Shown: piece by piece, positions 53,022 to 58,504 of the stretch | Numbering within the stretch: position 1 is the first letter of the stretch | How the letters are laid out: each line of letters opens with the position of its first letter | IMG/VR virus record: IMGVR_UViG_3300041411_000080 | Location: 256,859-320,858 of that record | DNA: 64,000 nucleotides | Strand: one strand, 5' to 3' | Translations under genes and position numbers: made by a program | Notes under the pieces: generated by a model | Told to the model about the DNA's origin: nothing | Seen by the model: only the letters and a program-made list of their open reading frames with translations | The model's database searches: none

Positions 53022-53024
53022 ATA

Positions 53025-53047
53025 ATACTTTTGTTGCAATAGTATGT
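53025..53047 (+). promoter_or_regulatory. ATACT-N9-ATAGTATG promoter-like element of the tRNA cluster
   Basis: Same signature as 45018, 56179 and 63245. Confidence 0.6.
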
Positions 53048-53120
53048 AGGACTATGAATCCTCAACGATTTCAGGAAGTTAGTAGATTGCTTAAATGTGA
53101 TTAAAAGCTTCCGCTTATTT

Positions 53121-53207
53121 GGAGAGGTTCCCGAGCGGCTCAAAGGGACCAGACTGTAAATCTGGCGTCTATCGACTTCCAAGGTTCAAATCCTTGTCTC
53201 TCCACCA
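53121..53207 (+). tRNA. tRNA-Tyr (GTA)
   Basis: GGAGAGG/TCTCTCC acceptor, CCAGA-CT-GTA-AA-TCTGG, long variable arm, GTTCAAATC, encoded CCA. Confidence 0.96.
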
Positions 53208-53225
53208 AATACAGAGGTGTTTGAT

Positions 53226-53390
53226 ATGAAGGTTAAAATTAATCCCCGCCCATTAGTCAACCATGGTCCAGCTGATTGTCGCTGTTGCTCACGGTTGAAC
53301 TGGAAGGATCTTAAACTTGATAAGCAAATTCTCAAAGAAGCTGTAAACGATGCTGACTACGCCCTCAGCAAACGTGAACAGCGTGCATAG
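53226..53390 (+). CDS. 54 aa protein inside the tRNA cluster
   Basis: GAGGTG SD; MKVKINPRPLVNHGPADCRCCSRLNW...QRA. Confidence 0.6.
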   Translation: MKVKINPRPLVNHGPADCRCCSRLNWKDLKLDKQILKEAVNDADYALSKREQRA

Positions 53391-53474
53391 TTACATGATT
53401 CTTGCAGCGGCTGCGCCTGAGTAAATGCTGTCTTAACTTAACGTTACGGCGTTAGGAGAATCACCCAGTTACAT

Positions 53475-53550
53475 TCCATGATAGCTCAGTTGGTAGAGCC
53501 CACCGCTGTTAACGGTGTTGTCCCTGGTTCGAGTCCAGGTCATGGAGCCA
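53475..53550 (+). tRNA. tRNA-Asn (GTT)
   Basis: TCCATGA/TCATGGA acceptor, CACCG-CT-GTT-AA-CGGTG, GTTCGAGTC, CCA. Confidence 0.96.
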
Positions 53551-53554
53551 ATTT

Positions 53555-53580
53555 AAAAGAGAACTTCGGTTCTCTTTTAT
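53555..53580 (+). terminator. UUCG hairpin between tRNAs (terminator or processing signal)
   Basis: AAAAGAGAAC-TTCG-GTTCTCTTTT. Confidence 0.65.
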
Positions 53581-53590
53581 TCAGTGTTAC

Positions 53591-53666
53591 ACATGCCTAG
53601 CTCAATTGGCAGAGCAGCTGCCTCCAAAGCAGTTGGTTCCAAGTTCGATTCTTGGGGTGTGTGCCA
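53591..53666 (+). tRNA. tRNA-Trp (CCA)
   Basis: ACATGCC/GGTGTGT acceptor with two G.U pairs, GCTGC-CT-CCA-AA-GCAGT, GTTCGATTC, CCA. Confidence 0.92.
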
Positions 53667-53668
53667 AA

Positions 53669-53766
53669 TTGAATGTAATGTAGAACTCGGGTTCAACTCC
53701 TGAGATTTGGACGGCCCGCCTAACAGGGCTATTAGCTTAAGCTGGTTAAAGCGGCATTACATTCGA
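53669..53766 (+). ncRNA. circularly permuted tRNA mimic (YrlA/Y-RNA-like topology)
   Basis: 13-bp terminal stem, T-arm, closed acceptor-like hairpin and D-arm, in that order; no anticodon loop. Confidence 0.75.
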
Positions 53767-53787
53767 CTTAATCCCTGTGCACGGGGA

Positions 53788-53895
53788 TACAATGTTCATG
53801 TGGATTACGATAGTGTGAGCGCCTCGTAAGCGTGAGAAGACCCTAGGCCTCAGGACAGAGGGAAAAGACCCGTAGCCACCGGAGAGAACATTGTA
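53788..53895 (+). ncRNA. unknown structured RNA
   Basis: Perfect 10-bp TACAATGTTC/GAACATTGTA closing stem continued by GTGG/CCAC and TACG/CGTA. Confidence 0.5.
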
Positions 53896-53958
53896 GTGCG
53901 TATACTTGGACGTCCCTCCATCGAACTGAAGCGTAGTTGGGAAACCAGTGTGATATTT

Positions 53959-53986
53959 GAGAGTCCTTCGGGACTCTCTTATGTCG
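53959..53986 (+). terminator. terminator of the tRNA/ncRNA cluster
   Basis: GAGAGTCC-UUCG-GGACTCTC then TTATGTCG. Confidence 0.85.
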
Positions 53987-54038
53987 TCTCAAGGATTACC
54001 AGACGGTATAGATGTATAGTTAACTAATCGAGGTGAGT

Positions 54039-54958: not shown

Positions 54959-55479
54959 TGTCAGCCCTAAACCTTATCAAACGCTATACCGCCAAAGCTG
55001 CGGGTATCATTGTAGACCGTCACGCTCCAGCACCAACTGGGAAGCTCACAGAGGACCCACAAGGCGAATGGATGAAGTGGAACGACCTCGCTATCCTTTA
55101 CAACAAAGGCATCCTGATCGAGAAGACAGAGGCCTTGGATGATCTGGTAGCTGATGGGCATGCTCAACGTGCTTTCATCCGTGATGCTACTGCAATAGGT
55201 TATACTGACTTCGATGAGATCATGCGTGTCCTTAAAGAATGTCGTGATCATGTTTTGGTTGAACGTGAGTTTGAGATCTGGTCTGTCGGTTACCGGGATA
55301 ATGGTAACCATACGCCACCTTTCTTGCTGGGTAAAGCTAAAGCCATGAGTTTCAACGAAGCATGCGTCAAACTAAAAGCTGAACTGGGCCCACAAAAGAC
55401 TGATGATTGGAAAGTGGATCAGTACGGACGGCACAGCGATTGGTGCGGTTACCTCAGAGCATCTGAGAAGCTCAACTAG
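54958..55479 (+). CDS. hypothetical protein
   Basis: 173 aa; TAATG coupling. Confidence 0.7.
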   Translation: MSALNLIKRYTAKAAGIIVDRHAPAPTGKLTEDPQGEWMKWNDLAILYNKGILIEKTEALDDLVADGHAQRAFIRDATAIGYTDFDEIMRVLKECRDHVLVEREFEIWSVGYRDNGNHTPPFLLGKAKAMSFNEACVKLKAELGPQKTDDWKVDQYGRHSDWCGYLRASEKLN

Positions 55480-55558
55480 CCCTGTGATAAAATACCCAGT
55501 CACATCATCTAATGAAGTCGGGTGAGACACACTACGACACTTCTAAAGAGAAATCAAA

Positions 55559-56176
55559 ATGCACGTAAATGAAGGCGATATCGCCAAGTACATACAAGAA
55601 CACGATGACCTGTACACCTGCACCATCGACGGTAAGAAACAAGTACTGGTTGCTAAAGACAGTCACACGCTGGTCGTGAAAGACATTGAAGGCTACTTCA
55701 TGTCGTTCGATTCGAATAAGGCACTGTTTGTTACAACTATGACTGGGGGAACGGTTCAAGTTGAAGTAGATGCAGTTTTCCCGTCTGAGTTGATAAAGGC
55801 TATTAAAGACGAAGCACTAGATAAAGCTATCCGTCATAGCCTCGAACGACTGCTCCCAGCTGCGGAAGAGATGATCAAGCATTACACTGCATTCGATAAG
55901 GCTCTACCCATAGCTCGCATGAAGACATATCTCCGTGTGTATGTCCTTAAAGATGCCGACTTCAGTCAAGCAGGTAAAGGTTCTGTGGTGATCTGTCCCA
56001 CTGACAATGATCCGACAGGTCAGGATCGTGACATCATTAAAGGGTACGTTTACTGTAGCGAACATGACAGCATCAAGTTCGAGACCGTTCAAGCTTGGCG
56101 CTATCGTCGGGTAAGCGCAAGTAGTATCTTCACTTGTAAGTACGATACGAGCTGGATCTCATTGATGTCAGCGTAA
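55559..56176 (+). CDS. hypothetical protein
   Basis: 205 aa. Confidence 0.75.
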   Translation: MHVNEGDIAKYIQEHDDLYTCTIDGKKQVLVAKDSHTLVVKDIEGYFMSFDSNKALFVTTMTGGTVQVEVDAVFPSELIKAIKDEALDKAIRHSLERLLPAAEEMIKHYTAFDKALPIARMKTYLRVYVLKDADFSQAGKGSVVICPTDNDPTGQDRDIIKGYVYCSEHDSIKFETVQAWRYRRVSASSIFTCKYDTSWISLMSA

Positions 56177-56178
56177 TA

Positions 56179-56201
56179 ATACTCGTTGGTAGATAGTATG
56201 T
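56179..56201 (+). promoter_or_regulatory. ATACT-N9-ATAGTATG promoter-like element
   Basis: Same signature as the tRNA-cluster promoter. Confidence 0.6.
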
Positions 56202-56460
56202 AAGACTAACAGTCTCACTCGTCCAACTACCTGCCCCTAATCCCCTCAGACTAGGGCCACAGACTGTAGGTAGTTGTGATTAAAAGTATCCCGTGACGCT
56301 CTCTGACAAGTCGGAATAAGAGAGTATCAGGAAAGTCGAAGGCCCGCACCCCTAATAGGCTGAACATCTGACGACTCAGGTACTAGGTCCGTCCGCTCAA
56401 CGTGCAGAGCACCCTTCCCCAAGGTATCATGGGCTGAAGCGAAACAGTAAACTCGTCCTT
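56200..56460 (+). ncRNA. unknown structured ncRNA of about 260 nt
   Basis: No + strand ORF of 60 aa or more; multiple stems; bounded by a promoter signature and a UUCG terminator. Confidence 0.6.
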
Positions 56461-56490
56461 TAGACCCTACCTTCGGGTAGGGTTCTATTC
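56461..56490 (+). terminator. terminator
   Basis: ACCCTACC-UUCG-GGTAGGGT. Confidence 0.8.
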
Positions 56491-56513
56491 CGCAAAATGA
56501 GAAGATTACAAAT

Positions 56514-56774
56514 ATGCAAAATGTCAAAGATCGAGTGGATGAATTAATCACTCTATACACTGGACCTGAGTTCAAAGGTTGCACGGCTGCCGCACGTGGG
56601 TATCATCTGGTACGAGCATTGGACTACGAAGTCTACTGCCAACTGTTCTCACCTTGGAAACCTACAATCGACTACAAACAAGCAGGTCCCCATGAAATCA
56701 CAGTAACCATAACCGGTTATTCTCCACAGGCTTGGTCTATCAATATTAAGGACTCAGACAATGAGAAAACTTGA
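56514..56774 (+). CDS. hypothetical protein
   Basis: 86 aa. Confidence 0.65.
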   Translation: MQNVKDRVDELITLYTGPEFKGCTAAARGYHLVRALDYEVYCQLFSPWKPTIDYKQAGPHEITVTITGYSPQAWSINIKDSDNEKT

Positions 56775-57168
56775 GGTAATGCGTAACAACATCCAACGCT
56801 TTAAAGCTCAACGCGAACAAAGATTAACTGATGAAAAACCGATCCATCCAGAAATTCTATCACGCCCTATAGGCGAGGATTATTCACTAAGTGATCGAGT
56901 ATTAGCCCCACCATATAACCTGATCTATTGCTACTATAGTAACACCCATGAGTTCGCCAAGCAACATATCCTAGGGGATAGTAGTCTTACACGAGAACAA
57001 CAGCGTGATATGTTAGAAGAACACTTACTGGGTCTTTGGAAAGCACAAAAGACGAGCGAGGCGTTGGGGTGCTCAAATAGATATAGTGATTGGAAACCAT
57101 CTGTTAAATGTGGAATGGCTGGACTCGAAATTTATCTAAATCGTACGCTAGTGATGTCACTGAGCTGA
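56761..57168 (+). CDS. hypothetical protein
   Basis: 135 aa; AAGGA SD. Confidence 0.7.
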   Translation: MRKLEVMRNNIQRFKAQREQRLTDEKPIHPEILSRPIGEDYSLSDRVLAPPYNLIYCYYSNTHEFAKQHILGDSSLTREQQRDMLEEHLLGLWKAQKTSEALGCSNRYSDWKPSVKCGMAGLEIYLNRTLVMSLS

Positions 57169-57187
57169 AAAAAAAATAAGGCATATA

Positions 57188-57217
57188 CCAGCTCCCGAAG
57201 GAGCTGGCTTTATGTCG
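57188..57217. terminator. bidirectional terminator
   Basis: CCAGCTCC-cgaa-GGAGCTGG then CTTTATGTCG. Confidence 0.85.
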
Positions 57218-57742
57218 TCATTTGACAATATGCTTCACCTTCAGAACCTTTACGGTCTTACCGACTGACTGGTCACATTTAGTACCAGCGTACAGCTGAT
57301 AATACTCACGATCAGAGAAGTCAGGGAACTGACGTTGCATCCATTCGTAGGAGGCTTCTTTAGGCCACTCACGCATGTTTGCAAGAGCATCTGGATCAAC
57401 TACCATGTGGTAGGCAACCCAACCGGCACGGTCACCCGGATTAGCCAAAGCGGCTTCGGACAACTTCACGCTGATCTCAGTATCATCAGCACCTTTGTCC
57501 ATCATGCCTTTAATGAAGCCGGCAGTCTGGGTTACAGCATCGCAAACTTCCGGGGTGATCTTAGCATCCTTCTTAGGAAGCTTATACAACACCTCGTAAC
57601 GATCATTAAGCATTTCGTTACCGAAGGCAGGTCGTGACATTGTCATGGAGAAAGCCATGATAAAGCAGAACACACCAACAGCTAACATTACGCCAAAGAA
57701 AGCGTAGCCTACAGTTTCAACATTATTGCGTCGGGACATCAT
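57218..57742 (-). CDS. membrane-anchored or periplasmic early protein
   Basis: N-terminal TM segment, two downstream Cys; monocistronic behind an early promoter. Confidence 0.75.
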   Translation of the reverse strand: MMSRRNNVETVGYAFFGVMLAVGVFCFIMAFSMTMSRPAFGNEMLNDRYEVLYKLPKKDAKITPEVCDAVTQTAGFIKGMMDKGADDTEISVKLSEAALANPGDRAGWVAYHMVVDPDALANMREWPKEASYEWMQRQFPDFSDREYYQLYAGTKCDQSVGKTVKVLKVKHIVK

Positions 57743-57774
57743 GAAATTCCTTTTTGAGGTTAATATTCACATGT

Positions 57775-57801
57775 GTAATATAGGGCTCAAAAGGCTTACA
57801 A
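57775..57801 (-). promoter_or_regulatory. phiKZ-type early promoter
   Basis: TTGTAAGCCTTTTGAGCCC-TATATTAC. Confidence 0.72.
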
Positions 57802-57850
57802 TAAATACTAGCGAGGTAGATAGTGTAGACAACAACTACACGAGGTTCTT

Positions 57851-58504
57851 ATGCACTGTCCAGACTTCATCACCCATATGCATGTCAAAAGTCGCTTTAA
57901 TGACCAAGTCGATGATTGGGTTAAAACTATATCCGATGCTATTTCATTAGTGGTTAAACGTAACCTGTCGGCTACCCGTAATCAACTCATTAACATCGTC
58001 AAAGCTGATTTGAATTACCAGTTCGAATCGCAGACTATCCCACCGTCTATCTGGGTGAGTGACAAAGGTGAGCGGCATATCAATATCATCGTTACGCTGT
58101 TTGATATCGGTAAGATGAAGTTTAAGGTAATCGTACCTTCACTGCGTACACCTGAAGAGATTCAAAAGAAAGCACGCTATGACCTAGGTTGCCTGATTGG
58201 TGATCTATCGCAAGACGTTTACGAGTGCAGCTATAATGACTTCGACGTATACGTTGGATGGAAAAGCAAGACACTCAATTCCTATTGGTCAGGGATGTCT
58301 GAATCCTTTAAGGACAATCTTCGTACACCGCACAACCGTCAGCTGTTCATCGAGTATTGCAATAAACCCGGCTGGGACTGGGAAGCACTGCTTGATGGAC
58401 TTTACGAGAAAGCTCAAGGCTGGCCTACTGATTGGCTAGACTCCTACAAAACACCGGATGAACTTTCAACCTTACCCTATTACCAGTATACAGAGGCAGC
58501 ATAA
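57851..58504 (+). CDS. hypothetical protein
   Basis: 217 aa; GAGG SD; coupled to the radical SAM gene. Confidence 0.75.
   Translation: MHCPDFITHMHVKSRFNDQVDDWVKTISDAISLVVKRNLSATRNQLINIVKADLNYQFESQTIPPSIWVSDKGERHINIIVTLFDIGKMKFKVIVPSLRTPEEIQKKARYDLGCLIGDLSQDVYECSYNDFDVYVGWKSKTLNSYWSGMSESFKDNLRTPHNRQLFIEYCNKPGWDWEALLDGLYEKAQGWPTDWLDSYKTPDELSTLPYYQYTEAA

What the first reader, a model, noticed from the sequence alone, without database searches (positions are those of the whole stretch)
56200..56490. Second stand-alone structured ncRNA (about 260 nt)
Seen: between the promoter signature and a UUCG terminator there is no + strand ORF. It carries an 11-bp CAACTACCTGC/GTAGGTAGTTG stem (56224-34 with 56266-76) enclosing CCCTA/TAGGG, then GCTCTCT/AGAGAGT, and a multibranch region closed by GCCC/GGGC with hairpins CTGA/TCAG, GCTC/GAGC and ACCTT/AAGGT. 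ACTCGTCC occurs in unpaired-looking positions near both ends (56217, 56451). Inference: an independent ncRNA gene; the repeated ACTCGTCC and the C-rich loops could be pairing seeds or protein-binding sites.
Basis: partly seen in the sequence, partly recalled or inferred. Interest (0 to 1): 0.72.

Follow-up and report, generated by a model that had tools for sequence, protein, structure and literature searches.

The report
New pseudoknotted jumbo-phage non-coding RNA
The stretch is a real gene for a folded RNA of about 290 bases that makes no protein; it belongs to an undescribed RNA family that related giant Pseudomonas phages keep among their tRNA genes, and its job is still unknown.

Summary
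Window 56200-56491 (+) is a stand-alone gene for a structured non-coding RNA in a 320-kb Pseudomonas-type jumbo phage related to 201phi2-1 and Viktualia. It has a TATG-type phage-polymerase promoter almost identical to the one before the window's own tRNA cluster. It ends in the phage's standard UUCG terminator. No frame is open on either strand in relatives.

I found 15 distinct homologues in jumbo-phage genomes and none in Rfam. The element is far better conserved than the neighbouring protein gene (91.5% versus 60.7% in L012).

Covariation is strong: 95% of cells are paired, 19 of 29 pairs show compensatory changes, and 0 of 500 shuffles reach the observed values.

In relatives the same 240-nt core lies between tRNA-Trp and tRNA-Leu(UAA), or directly before tRNA-Leu. 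In the window's lineage the tRNA is gone and the RNA is autonomous.

The function is unknown. I favour a trans-acting folded RNA, analogous to other tRNA-island phage RNAs such as ROOL and GOLLD. The ACTCGTCC repeat is not conserved. Transcript evidence is weak.

The parts
56178..56200 (+). Promoter block AATAC-N14-TATG; predicted transcription start at G56200, the last base of TATG.
   Evidence: The block is conserved in all six subfamily-A loci although the flanks diverge. A nearly identical block (TAATAATAC..ATAGTATGTARGACTA) precedes the window's tRNA-Tyr/Asn/Trp cluster at 53022-53052. In phiKZ the non-virion RNA polymerase recognises TATG and starts at its G (PMC12809450). In 201phi2-1 the Leu-tRNA is transcribed from a middle promoter (PMC11512511).
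56200..56491 (+). Predicted ncRNA transcript of about 290 nt, from the start site to the terminator tail.
   Evidence: Boundaries come from the promoter and terminator. Contigs from public runs lie inside it (56212-56401, 56224-56432, 56260-56401), with none in the 200 nt before or the 100 nt after (the run type is uncertain).
56224..56234 (+). P1, 5' arm (CAACTACCTGC).
   Evidence: Pairs with 56266-56276. Compensatory changes appear in L048 and L041. An equivalent stem is present in all 15 homologues.
56235..56253 (+). L1, a conserved C-rich unpaired segment inside the P1 loop (..TAATCCCCTCAGACTA).
   Evidence: AATCCYC..GAC.TA is conserved across both subfamilies.
56254..56265 (+). P3, 5' strand (GGGC + bulge + GACT), lying inside the P1 loop and abutting the P1 3' arm.
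   Evidence: Pairs with 56334-56345. There are 4 + 4 pairs, four of them with compensatory changes, and 95-98% of cells are paired.
56266..56276 (+). P1, 3' arm (GTAGGTAGTTG).
56289..56332 (+). P2 domain: outer pairs TCC/GGA and TGA/TCA, stem GCTCTCT/AGAGAGT (56298-56304 / 56319-56325), and a 14-nt loop ending in GGAATA.
   Evidence: Six of the seven stem pairs and all three outer pairs show double changes. The loop motif GAATA is conserved.
56334..56345 (+). P3, 3' strand (AGTC + GAAG + GCCC); closes the P1/P3 pseudoknot.
56368..56379 (+). P4 hairpin (CTGA CGAC TCAG).
   Evidence: Covaries across the family, with 98-100% of cells paired.
56395..56410 (+). P5 hairpin (GCTC..GAGC) with a variable loop. 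The shared end of two public contigs (56401) lies in this loop.
   Evidence: Present in subfamily A only.
56418..56433 (+). P6 hairpin (CCCA AGGTATCA TGGG).
   Evidence: The arms change together across the family: CCCA/TGGG, CTCA/TGAG, CCGA/TCGG, CCACC/GGTGG.
56433..56448 (+). P7' (GCTG..CAGT), the 3' module shared with the tRNA-Leu leaders of Viktualia and 201phi2-1.
   Evidence: 100% of cells are paired, and G-C changes to A-U in five members. The module is shared.
56463..56491 (+). Intrinsic terminator: GACCCTACC TTCG GGTAGGGTT plus tail CTATTCC.
   Evidence: Seven near-copies of this 28-nt motif occur elsewhere in the genome. About 45 stem-TTCG-stem-TTTAT sites occur genome-wide. Terminators of this type were validated in 201phi2-1 (PMC11512511).

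Best explanation
Window 56200-56491 (+) is an autonomous gene for a stable, pseudoknotted non-coding RNA of about 290 nt.

Shown here:
- It is the 240-nt core of an undescribed RNA family of Pseudomonas jumbo phages.
- The fold is conserved through compensatory changes (P1, P2, P3, P4, P6, P7'), and P3 forms an H-type pseudoknot with P1.
- In relatives the core sits inside the tRNA island, either between tRNA-Trp and tRNA-Leu(UAA) with extra 5' and 3' domains, or directly in front of tRNA-Leu.
- The window's genome has no tRNA-Leu. Here the core has a copy of the tRNA-cluster promoter and a standard terminator.

Inferred:
- The phage's non-virion RNA polymerase starts at G56200 and stops at the terminator.
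- In relatives, RNase P cleavage at the tRNA 5' end would make the 3' end instead.
- Because the core survived, under strong constraint, the loss of the tRNA and the change of its downstream genes, it acts in trans as a folded molecule. The conserved unpaired L1 (AAUCCYC) and the P2 loop (GAAUA) are the likely contact surfaces for a protein or RNA partner, plausibly from the translation or tRNA apparatus or a host defence factor.
- The natural deletion in 201phi2-1 suggests an accessory role rather than an essential one.
For: Homologues and conservation. There are six subfamily-A sequences and nine further core sequences. Nucleotide identity to the window, element versus upstream gene, is 91.5 vs 60.7 in L012, 85.6 vs 65.0 in L048 and 70.9 vs 61.8 in Viktualia.

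Structure. On 10 sequences 95.8% of cells are paired, 19 of 29 pairs have double changes, 0 of 500 shuffles reach the observed values, and slid controls give 29-46%. Results are similar on 15 distinct sequences, five of which were not used to build the model. P1 forms in all 15. Many invariant G.U pairs sit on the + strand.

No coding signal.

Promoter and terminator.

Context. The core lies in tRNA islands in all subfamily-B members and before tRNA-Leu in Viktualia. The own genome has only tRNA-Tyr, Asn and Trp. There is one copy per genome.

Public contigs are confined to 56212-56432, at 15.5x depth against 3-6x on the flanks in X19. Fragment ends at 56260 and 56401 fall in regions the model leaves unpaired.

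Published work on 201phi2-1 reports a small RNA immediately upstream of its tRNA and a middle promoter for the Leu-tRNA (PMC11512511).
Against: - No direct proof of a discrete transcript exists for this phage. The runs that hold the element are labelled RNA but flagged 'probably DNA', and they are assembled contigs without strand information.
- No partner, target or ligand was found, and a crude duplex scan against the phage's own translation starts gave no outlier.
- All members come from related phages, so counts of compensatory cells are inflated by shared ancestry.
- Alignment A4 was fitted to the model.
- 201phi2-1 propagates without most of the RNA.
- The terminator is followed within about 20 nt by the next ORF, which also fits a leader or attenuator reading.
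Confidence: 0.6

Rival explanations
1. Cis-acting leader. The folded RNA plus terminator would control read-through of the phage polymerase into whatever lies downstream (tRNA-Leu in relatives, ORFs 56514-57168 here). This could work either as a ligand- or protein-sensing attenuator or as a put-like antitermination RNA.
For: The order is promoter, structured RNA, terminator, then an RBS and start codon within about 20 nt in every member of the window's clade. No separate promoter is evident for ORFs 56514-57168. In Viktualia and 201phi2-1 the RNA or its remnant is the 5' leader of tRNA-Leu, and the 201phi2-1 small RNA was described as arising by premature termination. In the window's clade GCCC can pair with two alternative GGGC partners.
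Against: - The downstream genes are unrelated across the family: a tRNA, an 86-aa ORF or a 135-aa ORF, with no homology to 201phi2-1 gp446.
- In subfamily B the RNA lies between two tRNAs and would be cut out by tRNA processing.
- The terminator is the generic genome-wide type, and no conserved anti-terminator pairing exists.
- The alternative GGGC pairing is not conserved outside one clade.
- No Rfam riboswitch or leader family matches.
Confidence: 0.15
2. Base-pairing small RNA. The C-rich unpaired segments (L1 AAUCCCCUC, and CCCUUCCCC) would act as seeds that pair with G-rich or Shine-Dalgarno-like sequences of phage or host mRNAs.
For: L1 is conserved and unpaired in the covariation model. 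Its complement contains a GAGG(G/A) Shine-Dalgarno-like string.
Against: - No outlier target turned up among 896 candidate initiation regions of the phage.
- The second C-rich stretch is part of the P6 stem and is absent from subfamily B.
- The 3' tail UUCUAUUCC lacks the U-run typical of Hfq-dependent sRNAs.
- The RNA is much larger and more elaborately folded than typical seed-type sRNAs.
- The host genome is unknown, so host targets could not be scanned.
Confidence: 0.12
3. RNA-only assembly of the ROOL/GOLLD kind. The RNA would self-associate into a multimeric particle that holds or presents tRNAs or ribosomal components.
For: It has the same genomic habitat: phage tRNA islands, a conserved core plus variable flanking domains, and tRNAs covalently flanking the RNA in subfamily B (ROOL/GOLLD description in bioRxiv 10.1101/2024.12.08.627333).
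Against: There is no match to the ROOL or GOLLD models. The window's version is only about 290 nt. No test of oligomerisation was possible, because the complex predictor needs a protein chain.
Confidence: 0.08
4. Decaying remnant of a tRNA-Leu leader, or a mobile or intron-like insert, with no present function.
For: The tRNA-Leu is lost in the window's lineage. There is a clean indel of about 365 nt between 201phi2-1 and L014. HNH endonuclease genes sit beside tRNA-Leu in D6 and Psa21.
Against: Within the tRNA-less clade the RNA stays 86-97% identical, and its helices are maintained by compensatory changes, while the neighbouring gene drops to 61-65%. The 201phi2-1 indel cuts through the conserved core and leaves P6-P7, so it is a deletion and not a precise mobile unit. 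No group I or II intron model matches. There is no exon context.
Confidence: 0.04
5. The conserved element is really the minus-strand ORF 56327..56584 (85 aa), or another small protein gene.
For: An 85-aa GTG-initiated ORF exists on the minus strand. Viktualia's annotation places a 33-aa minus-strand CDS over the homologous stretch.
Against: Every frame on both strands has 1-12 stops in the homologues. Variable columns are spread 26/19/17 over codon positions 1/2/3. The ORF's 5' third lies beyond the terminator, in DNA that is not homologous in L012 and L048. Invariant G.U pairs are specific to the + strand.
Confidence: 0.01

Closest known systems
ROOL and GOLLD RNAs (large ornate RNAs of phages and prophages)
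   Same: Both are structured, pseudoknotted non-coding RNAs of unknown function encoded by phages in or beside tRNA islands. Like GOLLD, this family has a conserved core with variable flanking domains and sometimes has tRNAs attached.
   Different: There is no sequence or covariance-model match. The window's RNA is about 290 nt, against roughly 580 to over 800 nt. The hosts are Pseudomonas jumbo phages. Multimer formation is untested.
The 5'UTR-derived small RNA immediately upstream of the tRNA in phage 201phi2-1 (PMC11512511)
   Same: The locus and orientation are the same. The 201phi2-1 tRNA-Leu leader carries the P6-P7 3' module of this family, and model R1 hits it at 300373-300503 with E = 5.5e-5. 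That unit is reported to be driven by a middle promoter.
   Different: 201phi2-1 lacks the 5' domain, P1-P5 and the pseudoknot, through a deletion of about 365 nt relative to its relative L014. The paper describes no family, fold or core.
Small stable RNAs in the phage T4 tRNA gene cluster (species 1 and 2, rnaC/rnaD). Recalled from memory, not checked here.
   Same: They are non-tRNA stable RNAs encoded within a phage tRNA cluster, co-transcribed with tRNAs and released by tRNA-processing enzymes, and their function has long been unknown.
   Different: They are much smaller (about 120-140 nt). The window's RNA is no longer in a tRNA cluster.
MALAT1/mascRNA-type 3'-end formation (a functional analogy only)
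   Same: In Viktualia and subfamily B a tRNA directly follows the RNA, so RNase P cleavage would define the RNA's 3' end. The window's lineage uses a terminator for the same purpose.
   Different: That system is eukaryotic and unrelated in sequence. RNase P processing here is inferred, not shown.

Membership tests
Any Rfam 15 family (including ROOL, GOLLD, RNase P, tmRNA, 6S, group I/II introns, riboswitches, T-box) | A match to the family's covariance model at or near its gathering score. | tested here: not met
   Only tRNAs reach gathering scores in the window and in eight related loci. At E up to 10 on the element, and on the L014 and D6 versions, only scattered chance hits appear, all below 25 bits.
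ROOL / GOLLD | Encoded by phages or prophages, typically next to tRNA islands. | tested here: met
   All subfamily-B members lie between tRNA-Trp and tRNA-Leu, and Viktualia's copy abuts tRNA-Leu. The window's copy is 2.5 kb from its tRNA cluster and uses the same promoter type.
ROOL / GOLLD | Length of about 580 to over 800 nt, and homo-oligomeric cage formation. | not testable with these tools
   The window's RNA is about 290 nt, and the inter-tRNA versions are about 700-850 nt. The complex predictor refuses RNA-only jobs.
201phi2-1 tRNA-upstream small RNA (PMC11512511) | Homology to the sequence directly upstream of the 201phi2-1 tRNA-Leu. | tested here: inconclusive
   The 3' module (P6-P7) is shared. 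The published sRNA coordinates could not be read, and most of the RNA is absent from 201phi2-1.
tRNA / tmRNA | Cloverleaf or tRNA-like domain detectable by ARAGORN or Rfam. | tested here: not met
   ARAGORN finds only Tyr, Asn and Trp tRNAs at 53121-53666.
T-box-like tRNA-sensing leader | A specifier codon matching the anticodon of the linked tRNA, varying with it. | tested here: not met
   All linked tRNA-Leu genes have anticodon UAA, while the candidate UUA/CUA strings in the J1/2 linker vary independently.
Bacterial RNase P RNA | A P4 pseudoknot formed by CR-I and CR-V, and a model match. | tested here: not met
   Short string resemblances (GGAAAGUC, ACUCCACCC) were noticed. There is no RNase P hit at E up to 10. 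Covariation pairs the CR-I-like string with an upstream partner, not a downstream one.
Hfq-type base-pairing sRNA | An intrinsic terminator with a U-rich tail, plus a short conserved seed with identifiable targets. | tested here: inconclusive
   The tail is UUCUAUUCC, without a U-run. No outlier target was found in the phage genome. The host genome is unknown.
Protein-coding gene | A conserved open frame and third-position bias of substitutions. | tested here: not met
   Stops occur in all six frames in the homologues, and there is no codon periodicity.

The most novel reading that the evidence does not exclude
The window carries the minimal, self-contained form of a new class of tRNA-island RNAs of giant, 201phi2-1-like Pseudomonas phages. 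On this reading it is a pseudoknotted RNA that works as a machine in its own right, for example by binding the tRNA or ribosome apparatus or a host RNA-directed defence, or by self-assembling as ROOL and GOLLD do. Because it is only about 290 nt, has its own promoter and terminator, has a natural deletion mutant (201phi2-1), and has culturable carriers (Viktualia, Psa21, D6, RVTF4), it would make the old question of what tRNA-island phage RNAs do directly testable.
Probability: 0.25. Interest if true: 0.8.

Novelty: new variant of a known kind. Interest (0 to 1): 0.62.

Why it matters
Phage genomes repeatedly place elaborate non-coding RNAs among their tRNA genes (the T4 stable RNAs, ROOL, GOLLD), and none has an established function.

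This family adds an independent example in jumbo Pseudomonas phages related to 201phi2-1. These phages transcribe with their own polymerases and are chiefly exposed to RNA-level host defences.

The family offers several practical advantages:
- a compact core of about 240 nt with a covariation-proven pseudoknot;
- a lineage in which that core has become a stand-alone gene;
- a natural deletion allele;
- several culturable carriers.

It also corrects existing annotations. Viktualia carries a hypothetical protein call on top of the RNA, and D6, Psa21 and RVTF4 have 700-1200-nt unannotated gaps in their tRNA islands.

Tried and rejected
- **Rfam.** I scanned at gathering and at permissive thresholds on the window and on related loci. 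Only tRNAs came up.
- **RNase P RNA.** Short string resemblances prompted a check. There is no model hit, and the pairing topology is wrong.
- **T-box-like specifier.** There is no covariation with the anticodon.
- **Minus-strand ORF.** Not conserved.
- **Metagenome scan.** An 18-mer from the most conserved block gave 21 hits, all chance.
- **Bacterial genome scan.** None of the 80 listed loci scored with the model at E up to 1.
- **IMG/VR.** Exact-block scans found only L012. A protein-based locus search with the upstream gene found nothing.
- **phiKZ, Phabio and HPP-Temi.** Scanned with model R1, with no copy found.
- **Target search.** A duplex-energy scan of six conserved unpaired segments against 896 candidate initiation regions gave no outlier.
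- **Terminator-tail pairing.** The P2 loop is complementary to the RNA's own terminator tail over 7 nt. Genome-wide tails are mostly TTTATG(T/C)C, so I treat this as chance.
- **Neighbouring proteins.** No Pfam or PHROG function was found, and the downstream ORF has no homology to 201phi2-1 gp446.
- **Supplementary tables of the 201phi2-1 transcriptome paper.** Not held.

Full report
**Where the window is.** The window is bases 256859-320858 of a 320,858-bp virus record with direct terminal repeats. The gene upstream of the finding (55559-56176, 205 aa) is a homologue of gp447 of Pseudomonas phage 201phi2-1 and of a Viktualia protein. This is therefore a jumbo phage of the 201phi2-1/Viktualia kind. 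Close relatives turn up in rhizosphere, soil, leaf, plant and wastewater runs.

**The observation.** The stretch 56177-56513 holds no + strand ORF of 30 aa or more. The + strand folds at -91.2 kcal/mol, with z = -2.84 against dinucleotide shuffles; the minus strand gives z = -2.13. Rfam finds nothing here, either at gathering scores or at E up to 10.

**Homologues of the window type (subfamily A).**
- BLAST found a 73%-identical stretch in Viktualia, lying between the gp447 homologue and a tRNA-Leu.
- An exact-block scan of IMG/VR gave L012, from a 324,912-bp contig.
- Relatives of the upstream protein led to four more distinct loci in public assemblies: L050, L041 and L048, plus duplicates.
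- In these six sequences the element is much better conserved than its neighbour. Nucleotide identity to the window, element versus upstream gene, is 91.5 vs 60.7 (L012), 85.6 vs 65.0 (L048) and 70.9 vs 61.8 (Viktualia).
- The gene downstream differs. The 86-aa ORF at 56514 is absent from L012 and L048.

**The region is not coding.** Every frame on both strands has stops in the homologues. Variable columns under the minus-strand ORF 56327..56584 fall 26/19/17 on codon positions 1/2/3. The 5' third of that ORF lies in DNA that is not homologous in L012 and L048.

**Promoter and terminator.**
- All six loci share the block AATAC-N14-TATGTAAGAC (Viktualia ends TATGTG).
- The same block, nearly base for base, precedes the window's own tRNA-Tyr/Asn/Trp cluster at 53022-53052.
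- In phiKZ the non-virion RNA polymerase recognises TATG and starts at its G (PMC12809450).
- In 201phi2-1 the Leu-tRNA is reported to be transcribed from a middle promoter (PMC11512511).
- The hairpin 56463-56484 with a UUCG loop and the tail CTATTCC is one of the phage's standard terminators. Seven near-copies of the 28-mer lie elsewhere in the genome, and about 45 sites of the stem-TTCG-stem-TTTAT type exist.

**A larger family (subfamily B).**
- The 3' end of the element (GCTG.A.CG.A..AG) is shared with the tRNA-Leu leader of 201phi2-1.
- A close relative of 201phi2-1 from IMG/VR (L014) carries about 365 nt more at that spot.
- That insert has homologues in phages D6, Psa21 and RVTF4, inside 700-1200-nt unannotated gaps upstream of tRNA-Leu.
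- Side-by-side comparison showed that a segment of about 240 nt of these RNAs is collinear with the window's element. The shared pieces are TAATCCYC.GAC.TAGGGC, the P2 hairpin with a GAATA loop, CAGGGAAG..C.AAGCCCG, the P4 hairpin and the 3' module.
- A covariance model of this core (R1) finds exactly one copy in the own genome, in L012's genome, and in Viktualia, D6, Psa21 and RVTF4. It finds a remnant in 201phi2-1 (E = 5.5e-5) and nothing in phiKZ, Phabio or HPP-Temi.
- A gapped-pattern scan of IMG/VR followed by R1 added five new distinct members on jumbo-size contigs: L116, L067 (identical to L082 and L087), L080, L096 and L088, with E from 1e-23 to 1e-44.
None of the 80 loci listed scored with R1.
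- In every subfamily-B member with enough flank, the RNA lies between tRNA-Trp and tRNA-Leu(UAA).
- The window's genome has no tRNA-Leu at all.

**Structure.**
Thirteen pairs showed compensatory changes, and many G.U pairs are invariant on the + strand only.
- With ten sequences a different long-range helix emerged. GGGY..GAGYU (56254-56265) pairs with ARCUC..RCCC (56334-56345).
- Counted on that alignment, 95.8% of cells are paired, 19 of 29 pairs have changes on both sides, and no shuffle out of 500 reaches the observed values. Sliding the partners by 1-3 columns drops pairing to 29-46%.
- The figures hold on 15 distinct sequences, with the caveat that this alignment was fitted to the model.
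- The 5' strand of this helix (P3) lies inside the P1 loop and abuts the P1 3' arm, so P1 and P3 form an H-type pseudoknot with the P2 domain in the third loop.
- P1 itself forms in all 15 sequences, with quite different arm sequences.
It breaks without compensation in 10 of 15 sequences.
- ACCTT/AAGGT is limited to the invariant subfamily. It overlaps a hairpin whose arms do covary: CCCA/TGGG, CTCA/TGAG, CCGA/TCGG, CCACC/GGTGG.
- CCCTA/TAGGG is not kept outside the window's clade.
- The ACTCGTCC repeat is altered in L012, L048 and Viktualia.

**Transcript evidence.**
- Two searches for public runs found holders labelled as RNA libraries.
- Laid on 55000-58000, their contigs over the element are 56212-56401 (X19, depth 15.5 against 3-6 on flanking genes), 56224-56432 (X23) and 56260-56401 (X20). 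None lies in the 200 nt upstream or the 100 nt downstream.
- X19 and X20, from different studies with different adapters, both end at 56401 followed directly by adapter sequence.
- 56260 and 56401 fall in the P3 bulge and the P5 loop, which is what one expects of a folded RNA cut at exposed sites.
- The tool flags these runs as probably DNA, and contigs carry no strand. I count this as weak support only.

**What it most likely is and does.**
- The shown facts are a conserved, pseudoknotted, non-coding + strand RNA; a tRNA-type phage promoter and a standard terminator; and membership of a family otherwise embedded in tRNA islands.
- The core kept its sequence and its helices after the linked tRNA-Leu was lost and the downstream genes changed. 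I infer from this that it works in trans as a folded molecule rather than as a leader for a particular gene.
- In relatives its ends would be made by tRNA processing. Here they are made by its own promoter and terminator.
- The conserved unpaired L1 and the P2 loop are the obvious contact surfaces.
- The clean deletion in 201phi2-1 removes the 5' domain and P1-P5 but leaves P6-P7. It shows that the RNA is dispensable in at least one laboratory host, which points to an accessory role.
- I could not identify a partner. A duplex scan against the phage's own initiation regions gave no outlier, the neighbouring proteins have no known function, and the host genome is unknown.

**Rivals.**
- A cis-acting leader or antitermination element is the main alternative, because the next ORF starts about 20 nt after the terminator and no other promoter is evident. 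The unrelated downstream genes, the inter-tRNA position in subfamily B and the generic terminator speak against it.
- A seed-type small RNA, a ROOL/GOLLD-like self-assembling RNA, a decaying remnant and a protein-coding reading are treated in the rival list. The last is excluded.

**Comparison with what is known.**
- The closest analogues are ROOL and GOLLD. These are phage and prophage RNAs near tRNA islands, of unknown function, and GOLLD has a conserved 3' region and a variable 5' region (bioRxiv 10.1101/2024.12.08.627333). From memory, the small stable RNAs of the T4 tRNA cluster are also analogous.
- This RNA matches none of their models.
- The only published trace of the family that I found is the small RNA immediately upstream of a tRNA in the 201phi2-1 transcriptome paper. 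That corresponds to the truncated remnant.
- I therefore rate it as a new family within a known kind of element.

**Limits.** All 15 sequences come from related phages, so the number of independent compensatory events is smaller than the cell counts suggest. No phylogeny-aware test was available. P1 and P6 were assessed per sequence, not by a column-wise count, because MAFFT misaligns their arms between subfamilies. The host is inferred only from the hosts of relatives.

Noticed in passing
window 53667-53990: A second ORF-free block lies directly 3' of tRNA-Trp and ends in a standard terminator (GAGAGTCCTTCGGGACTCTC). Positions 53770-53990 are conserved in 201phi2-1 (302416-302633, unannotated), L014 and Viktualia. 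It is not homologous to the family described here.
   Followed up: partly
window 53664-53753: This stretch matches unannotated DNA of unrelated phages (pf16, GAP31, EC152 and several Salmonella phages) at 74-78% over 70-90 nt. It contains a T-arm-like hairpin (CTCGGG TTCAACT CCTGAG) and a 10-bp end-to-end stem. ARAGORN and Rfam call nothing, so it may be a tRNA-like element.
   Followed up: no
L002:3128-3247 (201phi2-1) versus L014:989-1480(-): 201phi2-1 has a clean deletion of about 365 nt relative to a nearly identical IMG/VR relative. The deletion removes most of the RNA and leaves only its 3' module as the tRNA-Leu leader.
   Followed up: yes
L017:1425-1642, L019:1426-1641, L067:9068-9287 and others (alignment A5): Subfamily-B RNAs carry an additional, highly conserved 5' domain of about 170-220 nt. 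D6, Psa21 and RVTF4 also carry a 250-400-nt 3' extension before tRNA-Leu. Together with the core, these fill 700-1200-nt unannotated gaps in the tRNA islands of these phages. I did not analyse their structure.
   Followed up: partly
L001:2692-2793 (Viktualia CDS0154, minus strand): A 33-aa hypothetical protein is annotated on top of the RNA. The frame is not conserved in relatives, so the call is probably spurious.
   Followed up: partly
L017:2286-3008 (D6) and L018:2312-3034 (Psa21): An HNH endonuclease gene sits directly after the tRNA-Leu that follows the RNA. The window has no counterpart.
   Followed up: no
window 56401 and 56260: Contigs from two unrelated public runs end at exactly 56401 followed by adapter, and one begins at 56260. 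Both positions are unpaired in the covariation model.
   Followed up: partly
window 56313-56319 and 56487-56493: The invariant P2 loop CGGAATA is complementary to the RNA's own terminator tail TATTCCG. Most terminator tails in the genome read TTTATG(T/C)C instead, so this is probably chance.
   Followed up: yes
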